Notes: a model not told the origin generated them from the sequence alone. A stretch of 64,000 nt of DNA from Dendrobates tinctorius (GCF_039654945.1 NW_027361733.1:23560001-23624000), one strand, 5' to 3'. Shown: positions 352-63,540, numbered from the stretch's first letter. Numbers and translations: made by a program.

Positions 352-1984
<1,633 letters not shown>

Positions 1985-5700: not shown

Positions 5701-6000
5701 ACAAGAATATAACTACTAAAAGGCCAGGGTCACACTAACCAACGCAAAATACGGTCAGTATTTTACATGCGTAATACGGATGAATGGCCCCTAAACAGTG
5801 CTCCATATGTCATCCGTAATCAAGGTGTGGTCGCGTATTTTGCGCATGTCAGCATCCGTATGTAATCCGTATGGCATCCGTATGGCGAGATTTTCTCGCA
5901 GGCTTGCAAAATGGACATATAATGGAGCCCTATGACAGGGTTTCTAACAGAAACCAAAGAAAAGATATAGACACATAGAATGCATATATATATATATATA

Positions 6001-7572: not shown

Positions 7573-8966
7573 TATATATGTGTCTCAATGACATGTGTAT
7601 ATATATATATATATATATATGTATTCTATGTGTATATATCTATTCTTTCGTTTCTTTATTAAACCTGTCAGTGTGAGATTACTGTATAGTGCACTGAAGT
7701 GCCGGCTTTTCTAAAAGACACCTGGTGCATATTTCTCGCAAGTCAAATGTGTGGTCCGTGTGTAATCCGTATTTTTTGCGCACCCATAGACCTGCATTGG
7801 CGTACTACGGGCGTAGTACGCTGACAATCGCAGCATGCTGTGATTGGCACGGAGCGTAGGATACGGATGAGAAATATACGGCTGTTGGGAGCTGCCCCAT
7901 AGAGAATCATTGGTCCGTGTCTAATGCGTGCTTTTAACGCCTCTCACTCGGCCGTATTCCTCGTTAGTGTGACCCCGGCCTTATACTGCTCCTATGTACA
8001 AGAATATAAATACTATAATACTGCTCCTATGTACAAGAATATAACTACTATAATACTGCCCCTATGTACAAGAATATAACTACTATAATACTGCCCCTAT
8101 GTACAGGAATATAACTACTATGATACTGCCCCTATGTACAAGAATATAACTACTATAATACTGCTCCTATGTACAAGAATATAACTACTGTAATACTGCC
8201 CCTATGTACAAGAATATAACTACTATAATACTGCTCCCTATGTACAAGAATATAACTACTATAATACTGCTCCTATGTACAAGAATATAACTACTGTAAT
8301 ACTGCCCCCTATGTACAAGAATATAACTACTATAATCCTACCCCCTATGTACAAGAATATAACTACTATAATACTGCCCCCTATGTACAAGAATATAACT
8401 ACTATAGTCCTACCCCCTATGTACAAGAATATAACTGCTATAATACTGACCCTATGTACAAGAATATAACTACTATAATACTGCCCCTATGTACAAGAAT
8501 ATAACTACTATAATACTGCTCCTATGTACAAGAATATAACTACTGTAATACTGCCCCCTATGTACAAGAATATAACTACTATAATCCTACCCCCTATGTA
8601 CAAGAATATAACTACTATAACCCTGCTCCTATGTACAAGAATGTAACTACTATAATACTGCTCCTATGTACAAGAATATAACTAATATAATACTGCTTCT
8701 AAGTAAAAGAATATAACTACTATAATACTGACCCTGTGTACTAGAATATAACCACTATAATACTGTTCCCCCCATGGTTAGTGTACCTCCTACTCATCTG
8801 CCACTATTAGTATATCCTTTTAATGCATTATAGCACACCATACTATAATACTGCTCCCTATGTACAAGAAAATAACTACCATAATACTGCTCCCTATGTA
8901 CAAGAACAGAACTACTATAATACTGCCCCCTATGTACAAGATTATAACTACTATAAAACTGCCCAT

Positions 8967-11474
8967 ATAGAATCATAGAGTTGGAAGGGACCTCCTGGGC
9001 CATCTGGTCCAACCCCCTGCTCAAAGCAGGATTCGCTAAATCATCCCAGTCAGATGTCTGTCCAGCCTCTGTTTGAAGACTTCCATTGAAGGAGAACTCA
9101 CCACTTCTCGTGGCAGCCTGTTCCACTCATTGATCACTCTAACTGTCAAAAAGTTTTTTCTAATATCTAATCTGTGTCTCCTCCCATTCAGTTTCATCCC
9201 ATTGCTTCTAGTCTTTCCTTGTGCAAATGAGAATAAAGTTGATCCTTCTACAATGTGACAGCCCTTTAGATATTTGTAGACAGCTATTAAGTCTCCTCTC
9301 AGTCTTCTCTTTTGCAAACTAAACATTCCCAAATCCTGCAACCTTTCCTCATAAGACAGGGTTTGCAGACCGGTCACCATTCTGGTCGCTCTTTTCTGAA
9401 CTTGCTCCAGTTTGTTGATGTCTTTTTTAAAATGTGGTGCCCAAAACTGGACACAATATTCCAGATGAGGTCTGACCAAAGAGGAGTAGAGGGAAATAAT
9501 GACTTCACGTGATCTAGACTGTATGCTTCTGTTAATACATCCTAGAATTGCATTTGCCTTTTTTGCTGCTGCATCACACTGTTGACTCATATTCAGTCTG
9601 TGATCTATTAGTATACCCAAGTCTTTTTCACATGTGCTGTCACTTAGCCCTATTCCTCCCATTCTATATATGTTTTTTCCATTTTTATTGCCCAGATGTA
9701 GTACTTTGCATTTCTCCCTGTTAAAAACCATTCTGTTAGTTGCTGCCCACTTCTCCAGTTTATTTAAATCTTTTTGAATCCTCTCTCTCTCTTCTCTAGT
9801 ATTAGCTATCCCTCCTAGCTTTGTGTCATCAGCAAATTTAATCAGTTTACCCTCAATTCCTTCATCTAAATCGTTGATAAAGATGTTGAACAATACAGGG
9901 CCCAGGACAGAGCCCTGTGGTACCCCACTTGAGACATTCTTCCAACTGGATGTGCAGCCATTTACGACCACTCTTTGGGTCCGATCACTAAGCCAGTTAT
10001 GAATCCACCTAACAGTTGCCTTGTCCATTCCATACTTAATCATTTTTTCAATAAGGATTGTATGAGAGACTTTGTCAAATGCTTTGCTGAAGTCAAGATA
10101 TACTATATCTACAGCATTTCCTTGATCCACCCAATCAGTGATACCGTCATAGAAGGAAATTAAGTTAGTCTGACATGACTTATTAGTTACAAACCCATGC
10201 TGACTCTGTTTAATCACTTCATTCTTATCCAGGTATTGACATACATGTTGTTTAATAATTTGTTCAAAGATCTTTCCTGGTATAGAAGTCAGACTCACCG
10301 GCCTATAGTTACCTGGGTCCACCTTCTTCCCCTTTTTGAAGATAGGAACAACATTTGCTCTTCTCCAGTCTTCTGGCACTTCTCCTGTTCTCCAAGAATT
10401 TTCAAAGATTATAGAGAGGGGTTCAAAAATTTCTTCTGCTATCTCCTTCAGTACTCTGGGGTGTAATTCATCTGGACCTGGAGACTTGAATTCATTTAGG
10501 CTAGCTAAGTGTTTCCTCACTATCTTTCTGTTTATAGATATCCTGGATTATTATATTCCCTTAATAGGACAGTGAATAACAGTTGATGTTACATTTCCTT
10601 TCTGAGAGAAAACAGATGCAAAATAGGAATTTAAAAGTTCAGCCTTCTCAACATCCTGTCTTACCATTTCATCATTTTCATCCTGTAAAAATCCTATAGC
10701 ATCTTTGACTTTTCTTTTACTTTTGACATATCCCCAAAATCCTTTATTATTGCTTTTGACATCTCTTGCAAGCCTCAATTCATTTTCAGCTTTAGCTAAT
10801 CTGATTTGTGCCCTGCAGGTTCTGCAGACAGCATTATATTCTTCTTTAGATATGCCTCCCTCTTTCCATTTTATAAACATTTTTTTCTTCCTTTTTAGCA
10901 TGTGCTTAAGTTCTGTGTTCATCCATCCTGGTTTCCTTAACTGCTTCCTATTCTTCCCTCTTTTCGGAATTGTTAACAACTGTGCTTTGAGAATTTCATT
11001 TTTCAAGATTTCTCATCCTTCCTGGACATTTTTGTCTTTAAGGATATCCAGCCATTGGATCCCTCCAATTCTCTTTCTGAATCCCTTAAAATCTGCCTTT
11101 CTGAAATCTAACCTTGATGTCTGAGTCTTCACAGGTCTTCCGCCTCTAGTTATCCAAAATTCTAAAATAGCATGGTCGCTACCTCCTAGGGTCCCAGCCA
11201 CTTTTACCTCCTCAACCATTTCCTCCCTGTTTATAAGGATTAGATCCAAGGTAGCAGTTCCCCTTGTTTTCTCCCTTACCTTTTGGAAGATAAAGTTGTC
11301 AGCAAGAGAGGATAAGAATTTCCTTGACCTGTTAGTTTTGCCTGAGAGAGATTCCCAACAAATGTCTGGATAGTTGAAATCTCCCATGACAACTATGTCA
11401 TATTTTTTGGAGAACTTGGCCATTTGATGCATAAAGAGTTCATCCATAGCTTCAGCTTGCACAGGCGGCCTGTA
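8967..11474 (-). mobile_element. CR1 LINE, 5'-truncated (ORF2 endonuclease C-terminal part, RT, 3' UTR)
   Basis: ORFs 11013-11492, 10551-11006 and 9036-10520 are one frame broken only by stops; motifs YYRPP, GDFN, SDH, PGPD, YRPVSL, QHGF, GVPQGSVLGP, FADD; 3' tail ctatgattctat typical of CR1. Confidence 0.95.
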
Positions 11475-14209
11475 GTACAAGAATATAACCACTATAATAC
11501 TGTCCCCTTATGTACAGGAATATAACTACTATAATATTGTGCTCCCTATGTACAAGAATATAACTACTATAATACTGCTCCTATGTACAAGAATATAACT
11601 AATATAATACTGCTTCTAAGTAAAAGAATATAACCACTATAATATTGACCCTATGTACTAGAATATAACCACTAAAATACTGTCCCCCCCCCGTGGCTAG
11701 TGTAACTTCTACTCATCTGCCACTATTAGTATATCCTTTTAGCGCATTATAGTACACCATACTATAACACTGCTCCCTATATACAAGAACATAACTACTA
11801 TAATACTGCTCATATATACAAGAATAAAACTACTATAATACTGCCCCCATGTAAAAGAATATAACTACTATAATACTGCCCCCTATGTACAAGAATATAA
11901 CTACTATAATACTGCTCCTATGTACAAGAATATAACTACTATAATACTGCCCTCTATGTACAAGAATATAACTACTATATTACCCCTATGTACAAGAATA
12001 TAACTACTATAATACTGCCCCTATGTACAAGAATATAACTACTATAATACTGCCCCTATGTACAAGAATATAACTACTATAATACTGCTCCTATGTACAA
12101 GAATATAACTACTATAATACTGTCCCTATATACAAGAATATAACTACTATAATACTGTCCCCTATGTACAAGAATATAACTACTATAATACTGCCCCCAT
12201 GTACAAGAATATAACTACTATAATACTGCTCCTATGTACAAGGATATAACTACTATAATACTGCCTCCTATGTACAAGAATATAACTACTATAATACTGC
12301 CACCTATGTACAAGAATATAATTACTATAATCCTGCCCCCTATGTACAAGAATATAACCACTATAATATTGACCCTATGTACAAGAATACAACCACTATA
12401 ATACTGTCCCCCCGTGGTTAGTGGACCTCAAACTCATCTGCCACTATTAGTATATCCCTTTAGTGCATTATAACACACCATACTATAGTAATGCTCCCTA
12501 TGTACACGAATTTAACTGCTATAATACTGACCCTATGTACAAGAATATAACTACTATAATACTGCTCCTATGTACAGGAATATAATTACTATAATACTGC
12601 TCCTATGTACAAGAATATAACTACTATAATACTGCTCCTTTGTACAAGAATATAACTACTATAATACTGCTCCTATGTACTAGAATATAACTAATATAAT
12701 ACTGCTTCTAAGTAAAAGAATATAACTACTATAATACTGACCCTGTGTACTAGAATATAACCACTATAATACTGTTCCCCCCCATGGATAGTGTACCTCC
12801 TACTCATCTGCCACTATTAGTATATCCTTTTAATGCATTATAGTACACCATACTATAATACTGCTCCCTATGTACAAGAACAGAACTACTATAATACTGC
12901 CCCCTATGTAGAAGAATATAACTACTCTAATACTGCCCCCTATGTACAAGATTATAACTACTATAATACTGCCCATATGTACAAGAATATAACTACTATA
13001 ATACTGCTCCTATGTACAAGAATATAACTAATATAATACTGCTTCTAAGTAAAAGAATATAACCACTATAATATTGACCCTATGTACTAGAATATAACCA
13101 CTATAATACTGCCCCCCCCCCGTGGTTAGTGTACCTCCTACTCATCTGCCACTATTAGTATATCCTTTTAGTGCATTATAGTACACCATACTATAATACT
13201 GCTCCCTATATACAATAACATAACCACTATAATACTGCTCATATATACAAGAATAAAACTACAGTACTATAACACTGCCCCCTATGTATAAGAATATAAC
13301 TACTATAATACTGCCACCTATGTACAAGAATATAACTACTATAATACTGCCCCCTATGTACAAGAATATAACTACTATAATACTGCCCCCTATGTACAAG
13401 AATATAACTCCTATAATACTGCCCCTATGTACAAAAATATAACTACAATAATACTGCACCCTACGTACAGGAATATATCTACTAGAATACTGCACCCTAC
13501 GTACAGGAATATATCTACTAGAATACTGCCCCTATGATGATTATGGAATGGTATGGGTAAGGTAATTTTCATAAGTAGCTTGCATCTATTTACACGTTAT
13601 TACACTGTACATCCTGTATACAGACATATTTCTCACGATCCACTTGTTTCTCTTTCTTTGTAATCTATATATTTATCTCTGTCGTGTCTTCAGTCATTAA
13701 ATAGTGTCGTCCTAAGGGGTTGATTTCGATCTTGTGGTGTCAACACATTTTACACAGATAAACATCAGCAGTAATTTTCTTCTTCCCGTGCACCTGCCAT
13801 GGAAAAAAGACAAAAAAGGCAAGTGAGGCTAAATATAAGACAAAAAAACTAATTTACAGAAATCATTCTACATCTCCAGAATTTACAAAGTTTTCTCCAC
13901 TGTGCTATGGCCACCTTGCATGTGGCTATAGTGGGCAGGAAGAACTTTCCATCTGAAAACAGATCTAGGTGTCTTTACACTCCAGAAAAGTACCACTACA
14001 AACAGAAGCGTACACAGAAATCATGGGGCCCCGTAGCAAAAGTTCTAATTGGGCCCTTCCCCCCCAAAAAATAAATAATTGCTGGGGTCACAGAAGAGCA
14101 TATCTCACAACTTTCCAGCCTTTAAATAGCAATTTTCCTCCTGCTGAAGTACTATATTTACTTCATTTATTGCCCCCATAAATTATGATGCCAACAAAAG
14201 TTTCCCTGA

Positions 14210-17507: not shown

Positions 17508-20500
17508 GTAACTACCACCCAGGCGGCGGGATACTGCGGGTGTAAGGAGGGTGACATATGGGGTGTAGAGGGCCCTCCGAACTTGTCACCCCTTCATCCC
17601 TGGTGTCTGGCACCCCGCTGTGCGCGTCACCCCGGTGTCTGGCACCCCGCTGTGCGCGTCACCCCGGTGTCTGGCACCCCGCTGTGCGCGTCACCCCGGT
17701 GTCTGGCACCCCGCTGTGCGCGTCACCCCTGTGTCTGGCACCCCGCTGTGCGCGTCACCCCTGTGTCTGGCACCCCGCTGTGCGCGTCACCCCGGTGTCT
17801 GGCACCCCGCTGTGCGCGTCACCCCGGTGTCTGGCACCCCGCTGTGCGCGTCACCCCGGTGTCTGGCACCCCGCTGTGCGCGTCACCCCGGTGTCTGGCA
17901 CCCCGCTGTGCGCGTCACCCCGGTGTCTGGCACCCCGCTGTGCGCGTCACCCCGGTGTCTGGCACCCCGCTGTGCGCGTCACCCCGGTGTCTGGCACCCC
18001 GCTGTGCGCGTCACCCCTGTGTCTGGCACCCCGCTGTGCGCGTCACCCCGGTGTCTGGCACCCCGCTGTGCGCGTCACCCCGGTGTCTGGCACCCCGCTG
18101 TGCGCGTCACCCCGGTGTCTGGCACCCCGCTGTGCGCGTCACCCCGGTGTCTGGCACCCCGCTGTGCGCGTCACCCCGGTGTCTGGCACCCCGCTGTGCG
18201 CGTCACCCCTGTGTCTGGCACCCCGCTGTGCGCGTCACCCCTGTGTCTGGCACCCCGCTGTGCGCGTCACCCCGGTGTCTGGCACCCCGCTGTGCGCGTC
18301 ACCCCGGTGTCTGGCACCCCGCTGTGCGCGTCACCCCGGTGTCTGGCACCCCGCTGTGCGCGTCACCCCGGTGTCTGGCACCCCGCTGTGCGCGTCACCC
18401 CTGTGTCTGGCACCCCGCTGTGCGCGTCACCCCGGTGTCTGGCACCCCGCTGTGCGCGTCACCCCGGTGTCTGGCACCCCGCTGTGCGCGTCACCCCTGT
18501 GTCTGGCACCCCGCTGTGCGCGTCACCCCTGTGTCTGGCACCCCGCTCTACCTGTCACCTCGGTATATGGCACCCTGCTGTATGCATCACCCCAGTGTGA
18601 CACCGTTATAGGTGTCACCCCAGTATATGGCACCCTGCTGTACGTGTCACCCAGTATATGACACCCAGCTGTATGCATCACCCCAGTATATGGCACCCTG
18701 CTGTACCTGTCACCCCGGTATGTGACCCCTTGCAGTTCGCGTCACCCCGGTATGTGACCCCTTGCAGTTCGCGTCACCCCGGTATGTGACCCCTTGCAGT
18801 TCGCGTCACCCCGGTATGTGACCCCTTGCAGTTCGCGTCACCCCGGTATGTGACCCCTTGCTGTACGCGTCACCCCGGTATGTGACCCCTTGCTGTACGC
18901 GTCACCCCGGTATGTGACCCCTTGCTGTACGCGTCACCCCGGTATGTGACCCCTTGCTCTACGCGTCACCCCGGTATGTGACCCCTTGCTGTACGCGTCA
19001 CCCTGGTATGTGACCCCTTGCTATGGCCAAAGATCCTGGACCTCAACCCTCCGTCAGGAATGAGACTCCAAATGATTGCAGCTCTGTGTGGAAACAAAAG
19101 GTGGCAGGGCCTTTGTGTCCTAAGGAAAGCGGTGGGGTACTTTTGAGTGGAGCAAAGGCAGGAGATTCCTTTTCGGGGGTCTGTGGGGAGTAGGGTTACA
19201 AGGTAGAAGGGCCTTTGTGAGGTTAAGGGGGTGAGGGAGGGGCACAGCTTGGCAGGGCTCTGCAGGGGAAGGAGGCGGGTTTTGCCCACCTCTGCAGGGG
19301 AAGGAGGCAGGCAGACCGGTGGGGGACATGCTGAAGGATAATTTTTCTTAATAGTGTGTGTGGACATGTGGCTGCCATTTTTGCTGGATATTATAGCCCT
19401 GGCAGATACATCTCCCGGTCACCCTCCTCTCTTTGTGTTTCAGGCAATGAATTCCGTAGGCGCAGGAAGTTATGTGACATCCAGAAGGCGCTGAGTAAGG
19501 ATCCCCCAGATGTAGCGACGCTTCGGCGGATGGCAATCAGCGAGGGCGGTCTTCTTACTGATGAGATCCGATGCCAAGTGTGGCCCAGACTCCTGAATGT
19601 CAGCACCGAGGAGCTGCCTCCACCCCCAGGTATGACAGCACTGTGAAAAGCACTGGGGATCACTAGAGACGGGGTCACCCCTGACTAGCTGCCTTATCTC
19701 TGCAGGTCCTGAACTGCGGGTGAACAACAAAGACTATGAGCAGGTTCTGCTGGACGTCCGGCGCTCGCTGAGACGCTTCCCCCCTGGTGAGATGTCAGTG
19801 GGGTTATTGGGTGATGTTATACTTAATCTACTGGTTATCTACAACTCCCATGGTGCTTTGCCCGTGGTTCACAATCTAAGGAGAATTCCAGTCTTCCTAA
19901 TATTATCCAGAAATCTGATGATCCAGCACTGTGCCTCATGGATGCCAGATTACAGTGGATAAATAAAGGCCCCATTTATTTCATAGCACCTTTTTTAAGT
20001 CTGAAAGGATTGGTAATAGGGGATGGGGGGGCCCTCATGTCCTGCTGGTTGGGGTGGAAGTGATCTGTTCTGAAGGCTGGCATTCTCCACCGTGCCCATT
20101 ATTGGATAAATGTGGTGAGAGGAGGGTTGACTTTACTTTCGGGACTTGGGTTGAGGCTTACGTTTTTCTGTCTTTTCTCAAACATGGGGGTACTCCGTCT
20201 GGTTTTGCCTCACAGGTATGCCCTTAAAGGAGCGGGAAGACTTGCAGGAGCAGCTGATTGACATCATCCTGCAGGTGTTGGCACGAAACCTGCAGTTGCA
20301 CTATTACCAGGGATATCATGATATTGTAGTCACTTTCCTGCTGGTGGTGGGAGGGCCGGTAGCCACTCTCCTGGTGGATAAGCTGTCCACACATCACCTA
20401 AGGTGGGTCTGTGTGAGCCCCCCATACCCCGACATCTGGCACATTCACTCCCACATATCCTTTTCTGCATACAGCTCACAGTGCTGTAACCCTCTAATAT

Positions 20501-24304: not shown

Positions 24305-24605
24305 AACACCCGGAAAGATGGAGGCAAGGCTCTTTTTGCATTGCTTGCAGCTTCAGGAATGTATTACAGCCACCACCACCATAGTTTATGCATTAATCAC
24401 AATGTTTCGGCCGATCAGCATGCCCTTCTTCAGACCAGGTTGTGCTGCCTTAGTTGCAGGCAGCTCATAAAGCCTTGGACCCATTATATGCCTGAAGATG
24501 GGCATGCTTATTATGCATTAATCACGACGTTTCTGCCAATGTACTGTAATGCCTTCCTGTAACTGCAAGCAATCCAAGAGAGTGCGGCTTCCATATTTCT
24601 GGTTA
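24305..24605. mobile_element. Degenerate Penelope-like inverted-repeat remnant
   Basis: Imperfect inverted arms (gcattgcttgcagcttcaggaatgtattacag / ctgtaatgccttcctgtaactgcaagcaatcc) around a CTGAAGA...GAAAC core. Confidence 0.45.
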
Positions 24606-38201: not shown

Positions 38202-39069
38202 TATATGCTTGTACATAGGGGGCAGTATTATTGTAGTTATATTGTTGTACCTAGGGACAGTATTATAGTAGTTATATTCTTGTACATAGGGGCAGTATTA
38301 CAGTAGATATATTCTTGTACATAGGGGGAATTATTAAGTACCGTAGTTATATTCTTATACATAGGGGGCAGTATTATAGTAGCTATATTCTTGTGCATAG
38401 GGGCAGTATTATAGTAGTTATATTCTTGTATATAGGGAGCAGTATTATAATAGTTATATTCTTGTACATAGGAGGCAGTATTATAGTAGATATATTCTTG
38501 TACATAGGAGCAGTATTATAGTAGTTACATTCTTGTACATAGGGGACAGTATTATAGTAGTTATATTCTTGTACATAGGGAGCAGTATTATTCTAGTTAT
38601 ATTGTTGTACATAGGGACAGTATTATAGTAGTTATATTCTTGTACATAGGGGCAGTATTATAGTAGATATATTCTTGTACATAGGAGCAGTATTATAGTA
38701 GTTACATTCTTGTACATAGGGGACAGTATTATAGTAGTTATATTCTTGTACATAGGGAGCAGTATTATTCTAGTTATATTGATGTACATAGGGACAGTAT
38801 TATAGTAGTTATATTCTTGTACATAGGGGCAGTATTATAGTAGATATATTCTTGTACATAGGGGGAATTATTAAGTACCGTAGTTATATTCTTATACATA
38901 GGGGGCAGTATTATAGTAGTTATATTCTTGTATATAGGGAGCAGTATTCTAGTAGTTATATTCTTGTACATAGGGAGCAGTATTATAATAGTTATATTCT
39001 TGTACATAAGGAGCAGTATTATAGTAGTTATATTCTTGTACATAGGGGGCAGTATCATAGTAGTTATAT
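38202..39069 (-). repeat. 35-36-bp satellite (same family as 4661-13535, opposite strand)
   Basis: (gggcagtattatagtagttatattcttgtacata)n. Confidence 0.95.
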
Positions 39070-44892: not shown

Positions 44893-46110
44893 GGCACTAT
44901 TATAGTAGCTTTATTCTCGTACATAGGAGCAGTATTATAGTAGTTATATTCATGTGCATAGGGGCAGTATTATAGTAGTTATATTCTTGTACACAGGGGT
45001 ATTATAGTATATATATATATTCTTGTATAGATGGACATTATTATAATAGTTATAAGTTTGGACATAGGGGCAGTAATATAGTAATTATATTCTTGTACAT
45101 AGGGGGCAGTATTATAGTAGTTTTATTCTTGTACATAGGAAGCAGTATTATAGTAGTTATATTTTTAGACATAGTGGACAGTATTATATAAGTTATATCA
45201 TTACACATAGGAAGCAGTATTATAGTAGTTATATTCTTGTACATAGGGTCAGTATTATAGTAGTTATATTCTTGTACATAGGGCAGTATTATAGTAGTTA
45301 TAGTCTTGTACATAGGAGCAGTATTATAGTAGTTATATTCTTGTACATGGGGCAGTATTATACATGGGGCAGTATTATAGTAGTTATATTCTTGTACATA
45401 GGAAACAGTATTATAGCAGTTATATTCTTGTACATAGGAAGCAGTATTATAGTAGTTATATTCTTGTACATAGGGAGCAGTATTATAGTAGTTATATTCT
45501 TGTACATAGGGTCAGTATTATAGTAGTTATATTCTTGTACATAGGGCAGTATTATAGTAGTTATAGTCTTGTACATAGGAGCAGTATTATAGTAGTTATA
45601 GTCTTGTACATAGGAGCAGTATTATAGTAGTTATATTCTTGTACATAGGAGCAGTATTATAGTAGCTATATTCTTGTACATAGGAAACAGTATTATAGCA
45701 GTTATATTCTTGTACATAGGAAGCAGTATTATAGTAGTTATATTCTTGTACATAGGGAGCAGTATTATAGTAGTTATATTCTTGTACATAGGGGCAGTAT
45801 TATAGTAGTTATATTCTTGTACATAGGGTGCAGTATTATAGTAGTTATATTCTTGTACATAGGGAGCAGTATTATAGTAGTTATATTCTCATGCATAGGA
45901 GCAGTATTATGGTATTTATATTCTTGTATATAGGATGCAGTATTGTAGTAGTTGTATTTTTGTACATATGGGTAGTATTGTAGTAGTTATATTCTTGCAT
46001 ATAGAGACAGTATTATAGTAGTTATATTCTTGGATATAGAGACAGTATTGTAGTAGTTATACTGTACATATTCTTGCACATAGGAGGCATTATTATAGTA
46101 ATTATATTGT
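44893..46110 (-). repeat. 35-36-bp satellite, continuation of the 38202-39069 array
   Basis: Same unit and strand. Confidence 0.95.
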
Positions 46111-52759: not shown

Positions 52760-55440
52760 CTTATCCTGTACTGATCCTGAGTTACATCCTGTATTATACT
52801 CCAGAGCTGCACTCACTATTCTGCTGGTGCACTCACTGTGTACATGCATTACATTACTTATCCTGTACTGATCCTGAGTTACATCCTGTATTATCCTCCA
52901 GAGCTGCACTCACTGTTCTGCTGGTGCACTCACTGTGTACATGCATTACATTACTTATCCTGTACTGATCCTGAGTTACATCCTGTATTATACTCCAGAG
53001 CTGCACTCACTATTCTGCTGATGCAGTCACTGTGTACATACATTACATTACTTATCCTGTACTGATCCTGAGTTACATCCTGCATTATACACCAGAGCTG
53101 CACTCACTATTCTGCTGGTGCAGTCACTGTGTACATACATTACATTACTTATCCTGTACTGATCCTGAGATACGTCCTGTATTATACTCCAGAGCTGCAC
53201 TCACTATTCTGCTGGTGGAGTCACTGTGTACATACATTACATATCCTGTACTGATCCTGAGTTACATCCTGTATTATACTCCAGAGCTGCACTCACTATT
53301 CTGCTGGTGGAGACAATGTGTACATACATGACATTACTTATCTGAAACTGATCCTGAGTTGCATCCTGTATTATACTCCAGAGCTGCATTCACTATTCTG
53401 CTGGTGGAATCACTGTGTACATACATTACATTACTTATCCTGTACTGATCCTGTGTTACATCCTGCATTATACTCCAGAGCTGCACTCACTATTCTGCTG
53501 GTGGAGACAATGTGTACATACATTACATTACTTATCTGAAACTGATCCTGAGTTGCATCCTGTATTATACTCCAGAGCTGCACTCACTATTCTGCTGGTG
53601 GAATCACTGTGTACATACATTACATTACTTATCCTGTACTGATCCTGTGTTACATCCTGCATTATACTCCAGAGCTGCACTCACTATTCTGCTGGTGGAG
53701 TCACTATGTACATACATTACTTATCCTGTACTGATCCTGAGTTACATCCTGTATTATACTCCAGAGCTGCACTCACTATTCTGCTGGTGGAATCACTGTG
53801 TACATACATTACATTACTTATCCTGTACTGATCCTGAGTTACATCCTGTATTATACTCCAGAGCTGCACTCACTATTCTGCTGGTGGAGACACTGGGTAC
53901 ATACATTACTGTTGAGAACTCATTTTCTGGTCTGCCTCTGGTTTCTGGTGAGGGAACTGTTTGTGCTGACAGAGGAGTCGTGAGTTCTCTTTCCGGGCTC
54001 CCTCTAGTGGTGGCAGGAGGTAATGAAGCTGATCTAATTAACAGAGACCTGCCACCTGATAATGAGGATGACGATTGGACATCTGGAGTCTCAGACTGGA
54101 TTTATGACAGCCAACTCCATATTCCCATGCTGGTGATTTTTTTCCTGCCTCCTGAGGTCTTGGTTTCCAGCTCAGTTCCTGTCTTCTCAAGCTAAGTTTT
54201 CTCTGCTAATGTTGACATTTGATTTGGTTTTGTCTATTCAGTTTTTGTGTGGTCAGCCAGCCCTGGCTGGGGCTGTGTTGAATTTCCACTCTTATGTTAC
54301 TGAATGTGCCAGTTTGCTTTTTGTCCCTTATTAGATTGGCCTTTTTTTGCTCTGCTATCAGAATATGCCAGCGTTGCTGATATAGTGGGTGAAGTCTAGT
54401 GACTTCAGGGGTTTTTTTTTGCTATCAGAAGTGTTGGACATTTTGTGCAGGGTTTTTTGGCGTGATTGCAGACAGTATCTTTCCTTTCCTGTCCTTTCTA
54501 GTCAGTGTGGGCCCCATTATTTGCTCAGCCTATTTTCCTACCTGTGTTTGTGCTTTCATCTTTTTTCACCGTCAATACATGTGTGGGGGCTATCTATTCC
54601 TTTGGGGTCTGCCCTGGGGCAGTTTAGATTTTCCCTTTTCTTGCTTTAGATTTATTTAGTCCTCCGGCTGTGACGAGGCGTCTAGAATCATCGTAGGTAC
54701 GCTCCACGGCTGCTGTTAGTTGTGTGGTTAGGATCAGGGGTCTGCAATCTGCGTAGTTACCAACCTCTCTGGTTTTCTGTGACTTAGCTTGGTTTTGTTT
54801 TCCTCCTCGGTGACCCAATCATAACACATTACATTACTTATTCTGTACTGATCCTGAGTTACATCCTGTATTATACTCCAGAGCTGCACTCACTATTCTG
54901 TTGGTGGAATCACTGTGTACATACATTACATTACTTATCTGTAACTGATCCTGAGTTGCATCCTGTATTATACTCTAGAGCTGCACTCACTATTCTGCAG
55001 GTGGAGTCACTGTGTACTTACATTACTTATCCTGTACAGATCCTGAGTTACATCCTGTATTATACTCCAGAGCTGCACTCACTATTCTGCTGGTGGAGTC
55101 ACTGCGCACATACATTACATTACTTATCCCGTACAGATCCTGAGTTGCATCCTGTATTATACTCCAGAGCTGCACTCACTATTCTGCTGGTGGAGTCACT
55201 GTGTACATACATTACATTACTTATCCTGTACTGATCCTGAGTTACATCCTGTATTATACTCCAGAGCTGCACTCACTATTCTGCTGGTGGAGTCACTGTG
55301 TGCATACATTACATTACTTATCCTCTACTGATCCTGAGTTATATCCTGTATTATACTCCAGAGCTGCACTCACTATTCTGCTGGTGGAGTCACTGTGTAC
55401 ATACATTACATTACTTATCCTGGGTTGATCCAGAGTTAAA
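52760..55440 (+). repeat. 92-97-bp satellite, interrupted by solo LTR copy 2
   Basis: (ttatcctgtactgatcctgagttacatcctgtattatactccagagctgcactcactattctgctggtggagtcactgtgtacatacattacattac)n. Confidence 0.95.
53910..54826 (+). mobile_element. Solo LTR, copy 2
   Basis: tgttgagaac...cataaca; 6-bp TSD cattac; homologous to 25276-26173. Confidence 0.88.
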
Positions 55441-55636: not shown

Positions 55637-56652
55637 TAATACAGGATACATCATTGGATCAGCAGAGGATGTGTGATGTATAGTGACCCTGCTGGTAGAA
55701 TAGTGAGTGCAGCTCCAGAGGATATCACTCCTAGTCCTATATCCTGTAGAGGTGAAATCTTCCACCTTTTGCTGATGGTTCAGTGTCCTATAGGTGTTTT
55801 ACATTCTGTAAATATCTGACATGATTATCTTCAAGGAAAGAATGAATCAGACAGGCTCCAATCCACCATGCTCAATACCGATATAGAATCCTTCCCCATA
55901 ATTTTTTGGCATCCGCATGCATCCGTCAAAGTGTGAAAAAACAGATCCGTTTCCGTTTTGCTGCAAACGGATCCGCGGTAGCCACTAATGGAAGTCTACG
56001 GGACAAAAAAAACGAATCCTCAAAAAAAAATAAAATGGCGGATCCGTTTTTTAAAGGGAAATTACGGATTTAGATGGATTTTAAAAAACGGAAGTGTGAT
56101 CCAGGCCTAAATTGTCTGCAGATATCAAGTGTGTGATCACCAATATGCCAAGGGTGGTGTGAGAGGACTTTGAAAAAAAATAGAAAAACATGGCTTTTTT
56201 TTAAATCAAAAACAACATCATTTTTTACATTTAAAGTTATTTTAACAGCTCACTGCCCCTGCTGTGGTCGGTAGTTGCTTCAGAGGATTGTTATTTGGTC
56301 ATATAGTATGTAAACATCTGTGATTGCAGCTCAGATCCAATGAAGTCAACAGAGAGCTGCAATACCATACACAGCCTGTGGACAGGTGTGGCACTGTTCT
56401 TTGAAGACAATATACAGTTTTTCTTAATTGTGTAACACCCCTTTAAGACATGGCAACAATCGGTCAAAGTGGTGGAATAGGCAGTGGCAGGCACACCCCA
56501 TGACCGCTGGGAGGCTGCACCACACTCCCCCTTCTGTCCCACACTCCAATCCTAACCCTATGTCTGTCTTGTGCAAATTATTAACTCCAGCCTCAGGCCA
56601 TTTTAGACATCCTTATATTCCTGGTTAAGAATTAGGATTGCAGTAGAAACTT

Positions 56653-56708
56653 ATGACGGCAAGTGAGAAGAGGCTCGGGGCAATAATGCACAGCAAGGAA
56701 GACCTCAG
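56653..56708 (+). CDS. PNP: pnp candidate exon 1 ([19 protein letters not shown])
   Basis: Two in-frame ATGs; phase-2 donor AG|gtgaga joins exon 2 as AGA TAT GAA. Confidence 0.65.
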
Positions 56709-56825
56709 GTGAGAGTTCTGCTCTAGGGGTAAAGCATATGGGGATTTCAATGGAGAGAAATACTTATATCCCTGTCAATAATATATACATATATTCTGCA
56801 TTCCAGGTGAGATCCTAAGGGAAGA

Positions 56826-56889
<64 letters not shown>

Positions 56890-59800
56890 CAACCCCTGAA
56901 GAAGAAGCGTTATGCTTCGAAACGCGTAGGGATTAAAGGGTTAACTTTTTTAACCTTGTCTAGTATGTTCTTCTTTGTCATATGCTGACCCCTCCTGCGG
57001 GTGCTCTGTATATCCGACTGTCTCCTTCATGTGCTGTTCTGTTGTATTTGCTCCATCCTGCAACTTCTTGCCAAGGGTATTCCTTGTCCCATGAAATTGA
57101 CTGCAAAAGAGGCACAGATTCAGCAAACGTCCAGATTAGGGGGATGGATCTTACAATGTTTCATAAATGGTGTCGGGAGGTTTTTAGCATTTATGTGACT
57201 GCAGAGAGGGGACAAGGATCCTCTGATGAGGTGGTAAGTATATCAGATTAACATATATGATGCTCATGTGTAGGAATCGGGCAGAACTATGAAGATTTTA
57301 CCCATTCCAACCATTCTCGAATTTTATACTTGCACATTTTCATAATTATCCCCTATAATCCCCTAACTCCTCCGCCATGATGTCTGATCCTTGTTGCTTT
57401 CTAACACTTACCCAACAGATATGAAGACTGTGAGGAGACGGCTCGGTGGCTCCTGGATCGGATCCAGTGTCCTCCAGACATTGCCATCATCTGTGGTACT
57501 GGCTTGGGACTCCTGGCTGAGACAATAACCAGCCACAAAACCTTTAACTACAGCCAGATCCCACATTTTCCAGAAAGTACTGGTGTGTAGCCGCCACATA
57601 ACCTGCGAATGATTTATACATCACTATGAGGCCGGGGTCAGACTTATGAGAAACTCGGCCGAGTTTCTCATAAGTCTGACCCCGGCTTTAGGGCTTGTGC
57701 AAATGACCGTTTTAGGCTAATGAGTGATATCTATGGTTTTGATGGGTCGCACTCATAGCAATGTTATTCTGTGGGGTTTCCTCAGACCAAGTGGTTAAAA
57801 AAAAAAAAAAAAAAATCGGACTGGACTCAGATGTCATCCAAGTGTGGTCCCATTTTCACAGTTTGACATCATTTCTTTTTTATGATCTCCACCTCTGGGA
57901 AAATCGGATCTGACTCTGTTCAAACTGGATAGACAGAAACCGGTCTTCTGCACATGCCCTTAGGGTGTGTTCACACGTAGCAGATTATCTGCAGATATTC
58001 CATCTGGATTTTGTTAGGATATATATGCAGTGTATGGCCGGGGTCACACTTGCGAGAAACTCGCACGAGTCTAGCATCTCAATACCCGGCACTCGGGACT
58101 GGAGCGCTCATATGCATAGAAATACATGCAGTTGCACATTCCGGTCCCGAGTGCCGGCGGCAGTGCCCCGGGTATTGAGACACGAGATTTGTGCGAGTTT
58201 CTCGCAAGTGTGACCCCGGCCTATGAGAAATTCCAGCTAAGTGATTGCGATTTGGAAAAATCTCATGCAAGCACTGCGGCATTTGAAGTTGTAAAAAGTC
58301 CCAGGCTCGGTGTATTTTTTAACATCAGTTTATGCTGCGTGTTTTCTGCGGTTCTATTGCAGTTATTAGCACATTGACTTTAAGAATGTGTGTAAAATCC
58401 ACAGAGTCTTATATTTATCAGTCTTTCCAACATTTCCAAGTACAAATTTGTAGTTTCCACCTTTTTTTTTTTTATTATATCTTTCTGTTGGCATTCTCAG
58501 AACTAATCCGCAGTTGGAATTTTGCACTGATTTTCGCACATTTCTGCTGTAAAATCCAGAACAAAATCTGCATAAAGTATTCCAGATTAGCAGCTGCGAA
58601 AACATGTGGATTTCTGGCACAAAACTGTGGAAGTAGTAGTCAGAAATTCTGCAATGACTGGACAAGCCCAGGGGTACACATATTTGGGAATTACATACAA
58701 CAATGTGCACCAGATTTCAGGTTCCAACATTTTTAGATTTCAATGAACATGTTACATGTCTCCTCTACTCTTTGTACCTTTCTGCCAGGCCAATTTGTGG
58801 TGCATGGACAGCCCCAGAAGTGATGTACCTGATGGATTTTTTTTTTTCATTTCAGTGGTGGGACACTCGGGGCAGCTGGTGTTTGGCAATCTGCAGGGCA
58901 AGTCATGCGTCTGTATGAAAGGCCGATTCCATGTGTATGAAGGATATCCCTTGTGGAAAGTAAGACCTGAGATCTCTGCATGTGACAACCTGCTGATCTG
59001 CTGTGTGTGATCCTGGTACCCACTGGCCCTCAACACCACTCCTTCTTAAAGGGCAGTTGTTACATGACCGCCGCCAAGCCGCTGGTCTCCCTCTGTATGT
59101 GTTAGCATGGGCTCAATTCAGAATGGTTGTCAGTCTGGCTACTAGATATGCTGCCTAACAACCACCATGTCAAAGGGGTCGTCAGGCAACAAAACCCTCA
59201 CAACCTAAGGGACAATAAGAGCAAGGAAGCTAAGGAGGAATTTAGGCCATTCTGCTTTAGCAAGTTCCTGAACAGCTACAGTTTGGTGAACACTGCACAG
59301 GACCACATCTCCTGTATAAATGGACACTGCACAGAACCACTTCTGTTATTCTGTATATATGGACACGGCACAGTACCACTTCTATTATTCTGTATATATG
59401 GACACGGCACAGTACCACTTCTATTATTCTGTATATATGGACACTGCACAGTACCACTTCTCCTGTATATATGGACACAGCACAGTACCACTTCTCCTGT
59501 ATATATGGACACCGCACAGTACCACTTCCCTTATTCTGTATATATGGACACTGCACAGTACCACTTTTCTTCTGTCTATATGGACACTGCACAGTACCAC
59601 TTCTCTTCTGTCTATATGGACACTGCACAGTACCACTTCTGTTATTCTGTATATATGGACACCGCACAGTACCACTTCCCTTATTCTGTATATATGGACA
59701 CTGCACAGTACCACTTTTCTTCTGTCTATATGGACACTGCACAGTACCACTTTTCTTCTGTCTATATGGACACTGCACAGTACCACTTCTCTTCTGTCTA

Positions 59801-62470
59801 TATGGACACTGCACAGTACCACTTCTCTTCTGTCTATATGGACACTGCACAGTACCATTTCTGTTATTCTGTATATATGGACACTGCACAGTACCACTTC
59901 TATTATTCTGTATATATGGACACTGCACAGTACCACTTTTCTTCTGTATATATGGACACTGCACAGCACCACTTCCCTTATTCTGTATATATGGACAATG
60001 CACAATACCACTTTTATTATTTCTATATGGACACTGGACAGTACCACTTTTCTTCTGTATATATGGACTGCACAGTACCACTTCTGTTATTCTGCATATA
60101 TGGACAGTGCACAGTACCACTTCTCTTATTTTGTATATATGGACACTGCACAGTACAACTTCTCCTATTCTGTATATATGGACACTGCACAGTACCACTT
60201 CTCCTATCCTGTATATATGGACACTACACAGCACTTCTCCTATTCTGTATATATGGACACTGCACAGTACTACTCCTCTTAATCTGTATACATGGACACT
60301 GCACAGTACCACTTCCCTTATTCTGTATATATGGACACTGCACAGCACTTCTCCTATTCTGTATATATGGACACTGCACAGTACTACTCCTCTTAATCTG
60401 TATACATGGACACTGCACAGTAACACTTCCATTATTCTGTATATATGGACACTGCACAGCACCACTTCTCTTATTCTGTATATATGGACACCACACAGCA
60501 CCACTTCTCCTATTCTGTATATATGGACACCGCACAGTACCACTTCTCCTATTCTGTATATATGGACACTGCACAGTACCACTTCTATTATTCTGCATAT
60601 ATGGACACTGCACAGTACCACTTCTGTTATCCTGTATGTATGAACACTGCACAATAGCACCTCTCTTATTCTGTATATATGAGCACGGCACAGTACCACT
60701 TCTCTTATTCTGCATATATGGACACTGCACAGTACCACTTCTCTTATTCTGTATATAAGGACACTGCACAGTACCACTTCTGTTACCCTGTATGTATGAA
60801 CACTGCACAGTACCACCTCTCTTATTCTGTATATATGGACACTGCACACTACCACTTCTTATTCTGTATATAAGGACACTGCACAGTACAACTTCTGTTA
60901 TCCTGTATGTATGAACACTGCACAGTACCACCTCTCTTATTCTCTATATATGGACACTGCACAGTACCACTTATCTTATTCTGCATATATGGACACTGCA
61001 CAGTACCACTTATCTTATTCTGTAAATAAGGACACTGCACAGTACCACTTCTGTTATCCTGTATGTATGAACACTGCACAGTACCACTTCTCTTATTCTG
61101 CATATATGGACACTGCACAGTACCACTTATCTTATTCTGTATATATGGACACTGCACAGTACCACTTCTCTTATTCTGTATATAAGGATACTGCACAGTA
61201 CCACTTCTCTTATTCTGTATATAAGGACACTGCACAGTACCACTTCTGTTATCCTGTATGTATGAACACTGCACAGTACCACTTATGTTATCCTGTATGT
61301 ATGAACACTGCACAGTACCACCTCTCTTTCATATATGGATACTGCACAGAATCACCTCTTTCACGGCCGCAAATACGGCCCCCCGGCGCACCGTGGAATT
61401 TTTGCGGGCCGATTTTGCGGCCCCATAGGAATCTATTGGGGACCAAAATTGGCCCACAAAAACACGGGAAGTGTAAAAGCAGCCTTACACGGTTCTGCTT
61501 CCTTATAATTACGGGTACAGGGATGAAGTCTCAGGATTTGCACACATAGATAATTGCCCAGCACAGTACCACTTCCAAGATACAGTTTATTCCATGAATG
61601 TACAGGAAGGTTCAACACTGTACTTATTACCTTTACCCTCTCAGTCTGTGACATTCTGGCAATCTCACTCCAGGTCACTTTCCCAATCAGAGTGTTTAAG
61701 TTGCTGGGAGTAAAGGTCCTGATGGTGACAAATGCAGCTGGGTCGCTCTGTGAGACGTACAGACCGGGAGACCTGATGATAATCCGGGATCATATCAACA
61801 TGCCGGGACTGGCTGCTCTGAACCCTCTAAGAGGACCCAACGATGAGAGGTGACCACCAAGGGGGTGATCCAACCTAGTAATGAACTACAAGTCCCAGCA
61901 TGCCTACACAGCTTTTGCTTGGCACTATTCAAAACCTGGAGAGTAAAAATAAAATGTCTAGATAAGATCTACAGATACATGTCACTTTATCTATGTAATC
62001 TTATAATAATATCATGATACTGTAAAGAGGTTCTGTAGATAAAGGTACCATGCTTTGAATCACAGCTGCTGCAGAATTTCTTTCATATTGATTCTTTTTT
62101 TAAAATAGGCAGCAACTGTGGTCTATATGGTGATGTACCATATACTAGTAAGAAAAATGTATTATATATTGGATGTATAGCACACGGACACAGCTGCTGC
62201 TTCAGAACCTTTTTGAGACCAAAATTTCCTTCAAGCACGGTCTATTGAGGAGTAAGATATTTTTTTAATTCTCTTGCAGGTTTGGCCCACGGTTTCCCTC
62301 CCTCTGGGACACGTATGATCGTGACCTGCGTATCACTGCTCTCGAGATCACCCAAAAGCTCGGTCAATCGGATCTCACCCACGAAGGCGTTTACTGCATG
62401 GTGGGAGGGCCAAACTTTGAGTCAGTTGCAGAAGCCAAATTTCTACAGAGACTGGGGGCAGATGCTGTAG
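56653..62470 (+). CDS. PNP: Purine nucleoside phosphorylase (trimeric PNP-I family, pnp4-like), exons 1-5; 3' incomplete
   Basis: Exons 56653(or 56686)-56708, 57419-57582, 58856-58959, 61674-61849, 62280-62470 join in frame; motifs [62 protein letters not shown]. Confidence 0.93.
56893..56931 (+). ncRNA. Minimal type I hammerhead ribozyme motif
   Basis: ccc-CTGAAGA-a-gaagc(gttat)gcttc-GAAA-cgcg-TA-ggg: complete core, 5-bp stem II, palindromic ACGCGT stem III, 3-bp stem I. Confidence 0.75.
57419..57582 (+). CDS. PNP: pnp exon 2
   Basis: caacag|A TAT GAA GAC...ACT G|gtgtgt; [33 protein letters not shown]. Confidence 0.92.
57630..58750. mobile_element. Cluster of abutting and nested Harbinger-like MITEs in pnp intron 2
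   Basis: 57630-57687 palindrome, TTA, 57691-57959, TTA, element from 57963 (right end uncertain) containing 58036-58221 with TAT TSD. Confidence 0.75.
58856..58959 (+). CDS. PNP: pnp exon 3
   Basis: tttcag|TG GTG GGA CAC...TGG AAA|gtaaga. Confidence 0.95.
59310..61350 (+). repeat. 33-39-bp minisatellite in pnp intron 3
   Basis: (tatatggacactgcacagtaccacttctgttattctgta)n; source of ORFs 59127-61549. Confidence 0.95.
61674..61849 (+). CDS. PNP: pnp exon 4
   Basis: ctccag|GTC ACT TTC CCA...GAG AG|gtgacc. Confidence 0.95.
62280..62470 (+). CDS. PNP: pnp exon 5
   Basis: ttgcag|G TTT GGC CCA...GCT GTA G|gcaagt (GC donor). Confidence 0.92.
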
Positions 62471-62515: not shown

Positions 62516-63540
62516 TTATAACACTGTCCCTATGTACAAGAATACAACTACTATAATTCTGCCCCATATGTACAGGAACATAACTACTATAATACTGCCC
62601 CCTATGTAGAAGAATACAACTACTATAATACTGTCCCATATGTACAAGTATATAACTACTATAATACTGCTCCCTATGTAAAAGAATATAACTACTATAA
62701 TACTGCCCCTATGTACAAGAATATAGCTACTATAATACTGCCCCATGTACAAGAATATAGCTACTATAATACTGCCCCTATGTACAAGAATAGAACTACT
62801 ATAATACTGCCCCCATGTACAAGAATATAGCTACTATAATACTGCTCCCTATGTAAAAGAATATAACTACTATAATACTGCCCCTATGTACAAGAATATA
62901 ACTACTATAATACTGCGCCTATGTACAAGAATATAACTACTATAATACTACCCCTATGTACAAGAATATAACTACTATAATACTGCTCCTATGTACAAGA
63001 ATATAACTACAATAATACTGCCCCTATGTACAAGAATATAACTACTATAATACTGCCCCTATGTACAAGAATATAGCTACTATAATACTGCTCCCTATGT
63101 AAAAGAATATAACTACTATAATACTGCCCCTATGTACAAGAATATAACTACTATAATACTGCGCCTATGTACAAGAATATAACTACTATAATACTACCCC
63201 TATATACAAGAATATAACTACTATAATACTGCTCCTATGTACAAGAATATAACTACTATGATACTGCCCCTATGTACAAGAATATAACTACTATAATACT
63301 GCCCCTATGTACAAGAATATAACTACTGTAATACTGCTCCCTATGTACAAGAATATAACTACTATAATACTGCTCCTATGTACAAGAATATAACTACTAT
63401 GATACTGCCCCTATGTACAAGAATATAACTACTATAATACTGCCCCTATGTACAAGAATATAACTACTGTAATACTGCTCCCTATGTACAAGAATATATT
63501 TACAATTCTACCCCCTGGGTACAAGAATATAAGTACTATA
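62516..63540 (+). repeat. 35-36-bp satellite in pnp intron 5
   Basis: Same family as 4661-13535. Confidence 0.95.

What the first reader, a model, noticed from the sequence alone, without database searches (positions are those of the whole stretch)
56893..56931. Complete minimal hammerhead ribozyme in sense orientation inside pnp intron 1
Seen: every core element is present and in order: CUGAAGA 56896-56902, stem II GAAGC/GCUUC, GAAA 56919-56922, self-complementary ACGCGU in place of stem III, GUA triplet with predicted cut after 56928, stem I CCC/GGG. It follows a long (TA)n tract and precedes ATTAAA. Established: minimal type I hammerheads with palindromic stem III occur in Penelope-like elements and newt satellite transcripts and usually cleave as dimers. 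Inference: a retroelement-derived ribozyme is transcribed within the pnp pre-mRNA and could cut it or act as a concentration-dependent switch. A single copy may be nearly inactive.
Basis: partly seen in the sequence, partly recalled or inferred. Interest (0 to 1): 0.72.

Follow-up and report, generated by a model that had tools for sequence, protein, structure and literature searches.

The report
Leftover retrotransposon hammerhead in pnp intron
The hammerhead ribozyme motif is real, but it is an ordinary single leftover of a Penelope-like jumping element, of a minimal type that barely cuts unless two copies pair, and nothing suggests it regulates the frog pnp gene.

Summary
The motif is present exactly as described at 56893-56931 (+). 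That A, the G10.1-C11.1 pair, and the palindromic CGCG in place of helix III are the published hallmarks of Penelope-like-element (PLE) minimal hammerheads, of which about 9,000 were reported in Xenopus tropicalis. A descriptor run on composition-matched simulated sequence gives about 2e-5 chance matches per 64-kb window, so chance is very unlikely. Rfam finds nothing, but it also misses a clear minimal hammerhead from an unrelated contig, so that blank describes the class. The pnp model holds on sequence grounds: exon 2 (from 57419) aligns to PNP residues 7-60. A short exon 1 ending at the donor 56708|56709 joins it in frame. This puts the motif in sense in a 710-nt intron 1. There is no second copy and no other ACGCGT in the visible part of the gene. 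The predicted monomer fold hides the core, and the active dimer gains no predicted energy. Published single minimal hammerheads do not cleave detectably. Verdict: solo PLE-type relic, known kind, regulatory role unsupported. The scan reported similar solo intronic copies elsewhere in this genome.

The parts
56893..56895 (+). Helix I, 5' strand (CCC)
   Evidence: Pairs with GGG 56929-56931. Only 3 bp, then an A.A mismatch.
56896..56902 (+). Core box C3-A9 (CUGAAGA)
   Evidence: Sequence. Matches the consensus CUGANGA.
56903..56903 (+). Unpaired A between A9 and G10.1
   Evidence: Sequence. A hallmark of PLE minimal hammerheads per PMC4209133. Also present in L001-L003.
56904..56918 (+). Helix II hairpin. 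It opens with G10.1-C11.1 and has 5 Watson-Crick pairs plus an optional G.U pair.
   Evidence: Helix II sequences differ but stay paired in L001-L003.
56919..56922 (+). Core G12 A13 A14 plus A15.1 (GAAA)
   Evidence: Sequence.
56923..56926 (+). Palindromic CGCG standing in for helix III/loop 3. With A15.1 and U16.1 it forms the self-complementary ACGCGU.
   Evidence: Sequence. The isolated 6-bp self-duplex is predicted at -7.5 kcal/mol.
56927..56928 (+). U16.1 and A17. The predicted scissile bond is between 56928 and 56929.
   Evidence: Position in the motif. No cleavage evidence was obtained.
56929..56931 (+). Helix I, 3' strand (GGG)
56932..56937 (+). ATTAAA, a variant poly(A) signal hexamer directly after helix I. 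Probably part of the same element.
   Evidence: L002 and L003 carry AATAAA within 4 nt after helix I.
56828..56884 (.). (TA)28.5 microsatellite ending 8 nt before helix I. It marks the left limit of any element-derived sequence.
   Evidence: Tandem Repeats Finder.
56653..56708 (+). Candidate pnp exon 1 coding part. ATG is at 56653 or 56686 and the donor is CAG|GTGAGA at 56708|56709.
   Evidence: Sequence and phase fit: AG plus A of exon 2 makes Arg. Inferred, with no RNA evidence.
56709..57418 (+). Inferred pnp intron 1 (710 nt), which contains the motif in sense
   Evidence: Donor and acceptor sequences, a ctaac branch-like site and a pyrimidine tract.
57419..57582 (+). pnp exon 2
   Evidence: The translation of 57420-57584 aligns to PNP residues 7-60 of solved structures, E 4e-15. 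An in-frame TAA at 57402-57404 excludes a start codon directly upstream.

Best explanation
This is a solo relic of a Penelope-like retroelement (PLE). It consists of the minimal type-I hammerhead that PLEs carry in their terminal repeat, probably with the poly(A)-signal hexamer that follows it. It sits in sense orientation in the short first intron of a frog pnp gene. It is transcribed passively with the pre-mRNA and removed with the intron. This hammerhead type has no helix III of its own. It becomes active only when two copies pair through the palindrome ACGCGU and swap their helix I strands. Here there is one copy and no partner, so it most likely cleaves not at all, or too slowly to compete with splicing of a 710-nt intron. 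Shown: the motif, its improbability by chance, its match to the published class features, the absence of a partner, and the gene model on sequence grounds. Inferred: PLE origin, transcription, and lack of activity.
For: All core positions and class hallmarks are present. [quoted passage not shown] That paper also reports about 9,000 minimal hammerheads in X. tropicalis, mostly single and attributed to truncated PLEs. The chance rate is about 2e-5 per window, against about 0.4 per window implied by that published count. A metagenome scan for the same outline found three contigs. All three are well-formed minimal hammerheads with the 1-nt bulge and different but paired helix II sequences. Two of them share 113 nt running from helix I to 64 nt past it, and both carry AATAAA right after helix I, like the ATTAAA here. 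The window holds no second hammerhead and no other ACGCGT in the visible gene. The monomer MFE of -12.3 kcal/mol is a slipped helix pairing C3-G1.1, U4-A17 and G5.U16.1, against -7.9 for the hammerhead fold. The dimer gains nothing over two monomers. In vitro, a single minimal hammerhead showed no detectable cleavage and dimers or trimers showed low cleavage. Eight of nine Xenopus dimer elements did not cleave. In the anole PLE, no RNA-seq reads start or end at the hammerhead site.
Against: I could not show that the flanks belong to a PLE. There is no RT or endonuclease ORF, no target-site duplication and no second copy in the window. No eukaryotic repeat library or frog genome was available. 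All four CpGs of the motif are intact in a CpG-depleted region (o/e 0.43). This could mean a young insertion, but it would also fit selection. Nearest-neighbour energies ignore hammerhead tertiary structure and any protein help. Trans pairing with transcripts of sister copies was not excluded. Exon 1 is inferred without RNA data.
Confidence: 0.85

Rival explanations
1. It is a working cis-regulatory ribozyme. The hammerhead cuts the pnp pre-mRNA in intron 1, either by pairing with another molecule or with host factors. This would lower pnp mRNA in the way the intronic CPEB3 ribozyme competes with splicing.
For: The core is intact with all CpGs preserved, it is in sense orientation, and it lies 185 nt past the exon 1 donor. 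Intronic ribozymes that tune expression exist, such as the CPEB3 ribozyme (PMC10919898 abstract).
Against: No partner copy or palindrome lies in the visible gene. The dimer is not favoured and the monomer fold hides the core. This class shows no or very low cleavage in vitro. Only about 490 nt separate the cut site from exon 2, so there is little time before splicing. With thousands of such copies per frog genome, many introns are expected to hold one by accident.
Confidence: 0.03
2. It is a chance match with no retroelement ancestry.
For: There is no Rfam hammerhead hit. No PLE sequence is recognisable in the flanks and no second copy is in the window.
Against: The expected chance rate is about 2e-5 per window and about 0.5 per 1.5-Gb genome for the descriptor, and none of 2e7 simulated seeds was as good as the observed motif. 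Features not demanded by a plain hammerhead search are present: the bulged nucleotide and the CGCG palindrome. The Rfam blank is shared by a clear minimal hammerhead.
Confidence: 0.02
3. It is a stranded monomer of a non-LTR retrozyme, a non-autonomous tandem hammerhead repeat, rather than a fragment of a PLE terminal repeat.
For: Frog genomes hold abundant retrozyme families related to PLE terminal repeats (bioRxiv 10.64898/2026.07.22.740005). Scan notes, which are unchecked leads, report such copies in this genome.
Against: There is no tandem unit and no second hammerhead. Helix I is 3 bp with no loop 1, and helix III is absent. That is the minimal PLE form, not the canonical type-I form described for retrozymes. 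The two categories overlap, since retrozymes derive from PLE terminal repeats.
Confidence: 0.08
4. The relic matters through its ATTAAA, not its ribozyme. The element's poly(A) signal in sense in intron 1 causes some premature termination of pnp transcripts.
For: ATTAAA follows helix I directly, and AATAAA sits at the same place in L002 and L003, so the hexamer looks like part of the element.
Against: No RNA 3'-end data could be obtained. Intronic poly(A) hexamers close to a strong 5' splice site are usually suppressed (general knowledge, not tested here). No GU-rich downstream element was assessed.
Confidence: 0.04

Closest known systems
Minimal hammerheads of Penelope-like elements (Cervera & de la Pena 2014, PMC4209133)
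   Same: Type-I order of elements and an intact core. One unpaired nucleotide between A9 and G10.1, the G10.1-C11.1 pair, and a short helix I. Helix III is replaced by a palindrome, so activity needs a dimer. These motifs occur mostly as single dispersed copies, and about 9,000 were reported in X. tropicalis.
   Different: Helix I here is only 3 bp, against the published 4-5. Helix II is 5-6 bp, against 7-8 in the Schistosoma families and 6 in Drosophila. Linkage to a PLE terminal repeat could not be shown for this copy.
Newt satellite 2 and amphibian non-LTR retrozyme hammerheads
   Same: Type-I amphibian hammerheads with a weak, palindromic helix III that act as dimers in tandem transcripts.
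   Different: Those have a 6-bp helix I with loop 1 contacting loop 2, and they sit in tandem units. This copy is single and lacks the loops.
Conserved intronic hammerheads of amniotes (Rfam HH9, HH10) and the intronic CPEB3 HDV-like ribozyme
   Same: A self-cleaving motif in sense orientation inside an intron of a protein-coding gene.
   Different: Those fold as stable monomers, are conserved at orthologous sites and, for the hammerheads, are recognised by Rfam models. This motif has no helix III and no Rfam hit, and its conservation is untested.
CChMVd (+) hammerhead with an extra A between A9 and G10.1 (De la Pena & Flores 2001, cited in PMC4209133)
   Same: An extra unpaired nucleotide at the same core position is tolerated in a natural hammerhead.
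   Different: That is a viroid hammerhead with complete helices.

Membership tests
Hammerhead ribozyme (catalytic core) | C3 U4 G5 A6 N7 G8 A9, G12 A13 A14, A15.1/U16.1 and H17 in type-I order between helices I and II | tested here: met
   Sequence read and descriptor hit.
Hammerhead ribozyme (catalytic core) | Site-specific self-cleavage 3' of H17 | not testable with these tools
This needs in vitro transcription or RNA end mapping.
PLE minimal hammerhead | [quoted passage not shown] | tested here: met
   A at 56903. The feature is listed in PMC4209133.
PLE minimal hammerhead | G10.1-C11.1 closing pair of helix II | tested here: met
   G56904-C56918.
PLE minimal hammerhead | Palindromic 15.2-16.2 / loop 3 instead of a stable helix III | tested here: met
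   ACGCGT at 56922-56927.
PLE minimal hammerhead | Lies in the terminal repeat of a PLE, or belongs to a genome-wide consensus family derived from one | not testable with these tools
   No frog genome or repeat library was available. There is no PLE ORF, TSD or second copy in the window. Related motifs in other contigs were also solo.
Rfam hammerhead families (Hammerhead_1 RF00163, HH9, HH10, type II, type III) | Covariance-model score at or above the gathering threshold | tested here: not met
   No hit at the gathering threshold over the whole window. None at E<=10 on 401 nt or on 60 nt. The control minimal hammerhead in L003 is also missed.
Non-LTR retrozyme | Tandem units of about 170-400 nt, each carrying a hammerhead | tested here: not met
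   There is a single motif. No tandem unit surrounds it and the flank has no repeat in the window.
Conserved intronic regulatory ribozyme | Conservation at the orthologous intron across species | not testable with these tools
   No related frog genomes could be reached.

The most novel reading that the evidence does not exclude
The single minimal hammerhead in pnp intron 1 is activated in trans. It would pair, through the shared ACGCGU palindrome and GGG/CCC helix I, with abundant transcripts of sister Penelope-type copies. Bursts of retroelement transcription would then cut the pnp pre-mRNA and couple transposon activity to purine salvage.
Probability: 0.02. Interest if true: 0.65.

Novelty: already known. 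Interest (0 to 1): 0.12.

Why it matters
As it stands this is routine genome annotation. It is one more dispersed Penelope-type minimal hammerhead that happens to lie in sense in an intron. Its value is as a calibration case. The motif is statistically real yet invisible to Rfam, so scans that rely on Rfam will miss this whole class. Scans that rely on motif reading will over-interpret single copies. It would matter only if cleavage or orthologous conservation were shown, because that would be a host gene controlled by a dimer-dependent ribozyme.

Tried and rejected
- **Rfam.** I ran it at the gathering threshold and at E<=10. There was no hammerhead hit. The (TA)n tract gave spurious microRNA-like matches, which I dismissed as low-complexity artefacts.
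- **Copies within the window.** blastn of 56501-57600 against the whole window found only TA-repeat matches.
- **A second core-box match.** The site at 24392-24435 (-) has only a 3-bp helix II, a 10-nt loop and a 2-bp helix I. I rejected it as chance.
- As a result there is no expression, RNA-end or copy-number evidence.
- **Scan-notes look-up by sequence.** It came back blank.
- **Literature look-ups.** The supplement of PMC4209133 is not held. A paper search for 10-mers of the motif returned only unrelated primer matches.
- **TSD search.** A search for target-site duplications around the motif gave only weak 73-78% pairs, which are not convincing.
- **Pfam on ORFs near the hammerheads of L001-L003.** No RT or GIY-YIG domain was found. 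The one weak, sub-threshold Phage_integrase hit in L003 was not pursued.
- **RNAalifold on a MAFFT alignment of the four motifs.** MAFFT misaligned helix II, and the tool returned only the slipped helix I. I parsed helix II by script instead.
- **Alternative exon 1 downstream of the motif.** The ATG at 57226 gives either an in-frame TGA or a weak donor, so I rejected it.
- The big protein searches were not used.

Full report
**Observation**

The sequence at 56893-56931 on the + strand reads, in order:
- CCC at 56893-56895
- CTGAAGA at 56896-56902
- one unpaired A at 56903
- a hairpin GAAGC / GCTTC at 56904-56918, which has 6 pairs if the G.U pair 56909/56913 is counted
- GAAA at 56919-56922
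- CGCG at 56923-56926
- TA at 56927-56928
- GGG at 56929-56931

ACGCGT (56922-56927) is self-complementary. ATTAAA follows at 56932-56937. A (TA)28.5 tract lies at 56828-56884.

**Is it more than chance?**

I wrote a descriptor with these requirements:
- helix I of at least 3 bp
- the CUGANGA box
- a bulge of 0-1 nt
- helix II of at least 4 bp, opening with G-C
- GAAA
- a palindromic insert of 0-6 nt
- U followed by H (any base but G)

In the real window it hits only this site, on either strand. That holds with relaxed stems and with the variant core pairs U3-A8, A3-U8 and G3-C8. A plain pattern without stem requirements gives 6 matches against 4 expected, so the stems carry the signal.

For the chance rate I simulated 2e7 seeded contexts from the window's first-order Markov composition (CpG o/e 0.43). 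The descriptor was met 13 times. This corresponds to:
- 1.5e-10 per strand position
- about 2e-5 per 64-kb window
- about 0.5 per 1.5-Gb genome

No simulated hit had the bulge, a helix II of 5 bp or more, and a 4-nt palindrome together.

The published count of about 9,000 minimal hammerheads in X. tropicalis (PMC4209133) implies roughly 0.4 real motifs per window of this size. If this frog is comparable, the odds of real against chance are of the order of 10,000 to 1. I did not identify the species myself. The scan's own notes call it a frog.

**What kind of hammerhead it is**

Cervera and de la Pena (PMC4209133) describe minimal type-I hammerheads in the terminal repeats of Penelope-like elements (PLEs). 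They list features that emerged without being demanded by their search:
- a conserved G10.1-C11.1 pair
- palindromic 15.2-16.2/loop 3
- a short helix I

The motif here has all of them.

Rfam gives no hammerhead hit at the gathering threshold. It gives none at E<=10 on a 401-nt or a 60-nt stretch either. This is a property of the class, as the control described below shows.

**Related sequences from elsewhere**

One scan of metagenome contigs for the outline CTGAAGA-N-G...C-GAAACGCGTAGGG returned three contigs, L001-L003. The pattern fixed only the outermost pair of helix II. All three nevertheless parse as proper minimal hammerheads:
- each has a single bulged nucleotide
- helix II is 4-5 bp with a different sequence in each (GAUA/UGUC, GUGUG/CACAC, GUCUA/UAGAC, against GAAGC/GCUUC here)
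- each has the CGCG palindrome

L002 and L003 are related to each other over 113 nt, running from the start of helix I to 64 nt past the motif (84% identity). Within helix II they differ by paired changes. Both carry AATAAA within 4 nt after helix I, at the place where this locus has ATTAAA.

As a control for the Rfam result above, the L003 motif also gets no Rfam hit at E<=10.

None of the three contigs shows an RT or GIY-YIG ORF next to the motif. They are solo copies too, and they do not themselves prove the PLE link. That link rests on the literature.

**Gene context**

The translation of 57420-57584 (+) aligns to residues 7-60 of solved purine nucleoside phosphorylases, E 4e-15. The evidence for the splice sites is:
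- The acceptor is cccaacag|A at 57418|57419, preceded by a pyrimidine tract and a ctaac.
- An in-frame TAA at 57402-57404 excludes a start codon directly upstream, so a short upstream exon must supply Met plus about 6 residues.
It has an ATG at 56653 or 56686 and the donor CAG|GTGAGA at 56708|56709.
- The phase is 2, so its last AG joins the first A of exon 2 as an Arg codon, followed by YED....
- An identical 9-mer, CAGGTGAGA, occurs again at 56804-56812. It also lies upstream of the motif.
- The only candidate exon 1 downstream of the motif (ATG at 57226) gives an in-frame stop or a weak donor.

The motif is therefore most likely in sense inside a 710-nt intron 1. It lies 185 nt after the donor and 490 nt before exon 2. 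This is inferred from sequence alone. 

**Would it cut?**

The hammerhead has no helix III of its own. Activity needs two copies that pair through ACGCGU and swap their helix I strands.

- *Partner.* The window holds no second hammerhead. ACGCGT occurs elsewhere only in a 32-nt satellite at 18865-18993 and at 24900, far outside the gene.
- *Monomer fold.* The predicted fold (-12.3 kcal/mol, z -2.1) is a slipped helix that pairs C3 with G1.1, U4 with A17, and G5 with U16.1. The hammerhead secondary structure scores -7.9. RNAalifold predicts the same slipped helix for all four sequences, so this too is a class trait.
- *Dimer.* The double-hammerhead dimer evaluates to -25.7 kcal/mol, against -26.0 for two free monomer ensembles. 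The model predicts no gain even at a 1 M standard state. The isolated ACGCGU duplex is -7.5 kcal/mol, which means micromolar affinity at best. That is far above any plausible concentration of a single-gene intron (inference). Nearest-neighbour energies ignore tertiary contacts and proteins, so this argument is indicative only.
- *Published experiments point the same way.* A single Schistosoma minimal hammerhead showed no detectable cleavage, and dimers and trimers showed only low cleavage. Eight of nine Xenopus dimer elements did not cleave in vitro. In the anole PLE, no RNA-seq reads begin or end at the hammerhead site, and ribozyme mutants did not affect insertion in vitro.
- *Timing.* With only about 490 nt between the site and exon 2, a slow ribozyme has little time before the intron is spliced (inference).

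**Origin and age**

The immediate left flank is the (TA)n tract and then exon 1. The right flank runs 487 nt to exon 2. Any element-derived sequence is therefore under about 530 nt and carries no PLE ORF. I found no convincing target-site duplication.

All four CpGs of the motif are intact although the region is not a CpG island (GC 34-48%; CpG o/e 0.43). This suggests a fairly young insertion but would also fit selection. I cannot separate the two without other copies or orthologous introns.

**Earlier notes of this scan**

These are unchecked leads. They report hundreds of hammerhead findings in this genome. Among them are other solo Penelope-type minimal hammerheads in introns, and hammerheads followed by AATAAA. 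They agree with my reading but are not independent evidence. I tested the AATAAA association only on the two metagenome contigs.

**Verdict**

The object is a solo Penelope-type minimal hammerhead relic, a kind already described and very abundant in frogs. The sense-in-intron placement is plausible on sequence grounds. The proposal that it cuts or switches pnp expression has no support and several arguments against it. Interest is low.

Noticed in passing
window 56932-56937; L002 about 8005-8018 (-); L003 about 380-390 (+): A poly(A)-signal hexamer (ATTAAA here, AATAAA in two unrelated metagenome contigs) directly follows helix I of the minimal hammerhead. It may be a conserved part of this hammerhead-bearing element and may mark the RNA 3' end shortly after the ribozyme.
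   Followed up: partly
L002:7951-8063 (-) and L003:335-442 (+): Two metagenome contigs share only a 113-nt unit that starts exactly at helix I of the hammerhead and ends 64 nt past it. It looks like a very short hammerhead-plus-tail insertion unit. The source organisms are unknown.
   Followed up: partly
L003:536-853 (+): An ORF 160 nt downstream of the L003 hammerhead has a weak, sub-threshold Pfam match to Phage_integrase (tyrosine recombinase), E 1.2e-4. This could be chance, or a hint of a tyrosine-recombinase element.
   Followed up: no
window 56706-56714 and 56804-56812: The 9-mer CAGGTGAGA, a strong 5' splice-site consensus, occurs twice 98 nt apart at the start of pnp intron 1. The second copy is a possible alternative donor, but it would not keep the reading frame.
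   Followed up: partly
window 4729-13536, 38202-39069, 44893-46061, 62517-63540: The same 35-nt minisatellite unit (TACTATAATACTGCCCC...) forms many arrays across the window in both orientations, including one inside the pnp gene. It looks like a very abundant dispersed satellite or element tail.
   Followed up: no
window 59312-61349: A 39-nt minisatellite of about 54 copies sits inside a pnp intron, between the exons near 58.9 kb and 61.7 kb. It produces long spurious ORFs on both strands.
   Followed up: no
window 52760-53909 and 54826-55438: Two arrays of a 97-nt tandem repeat (12 and 6 copies, about 91% identity) lie 1-4 kb upstream of the pnp start.
   Followed up: no
window 17598-19007: A GC-rich 32-nt tandem repeat of 44 copies at 94% identity, containing CGCG and in part ACGCGT. 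It holds five of the six other occurrences of the hammerhead's palindrome in the window (the sixth is at 24900) and is unrelated to the hammerhead.
   Followed up: no
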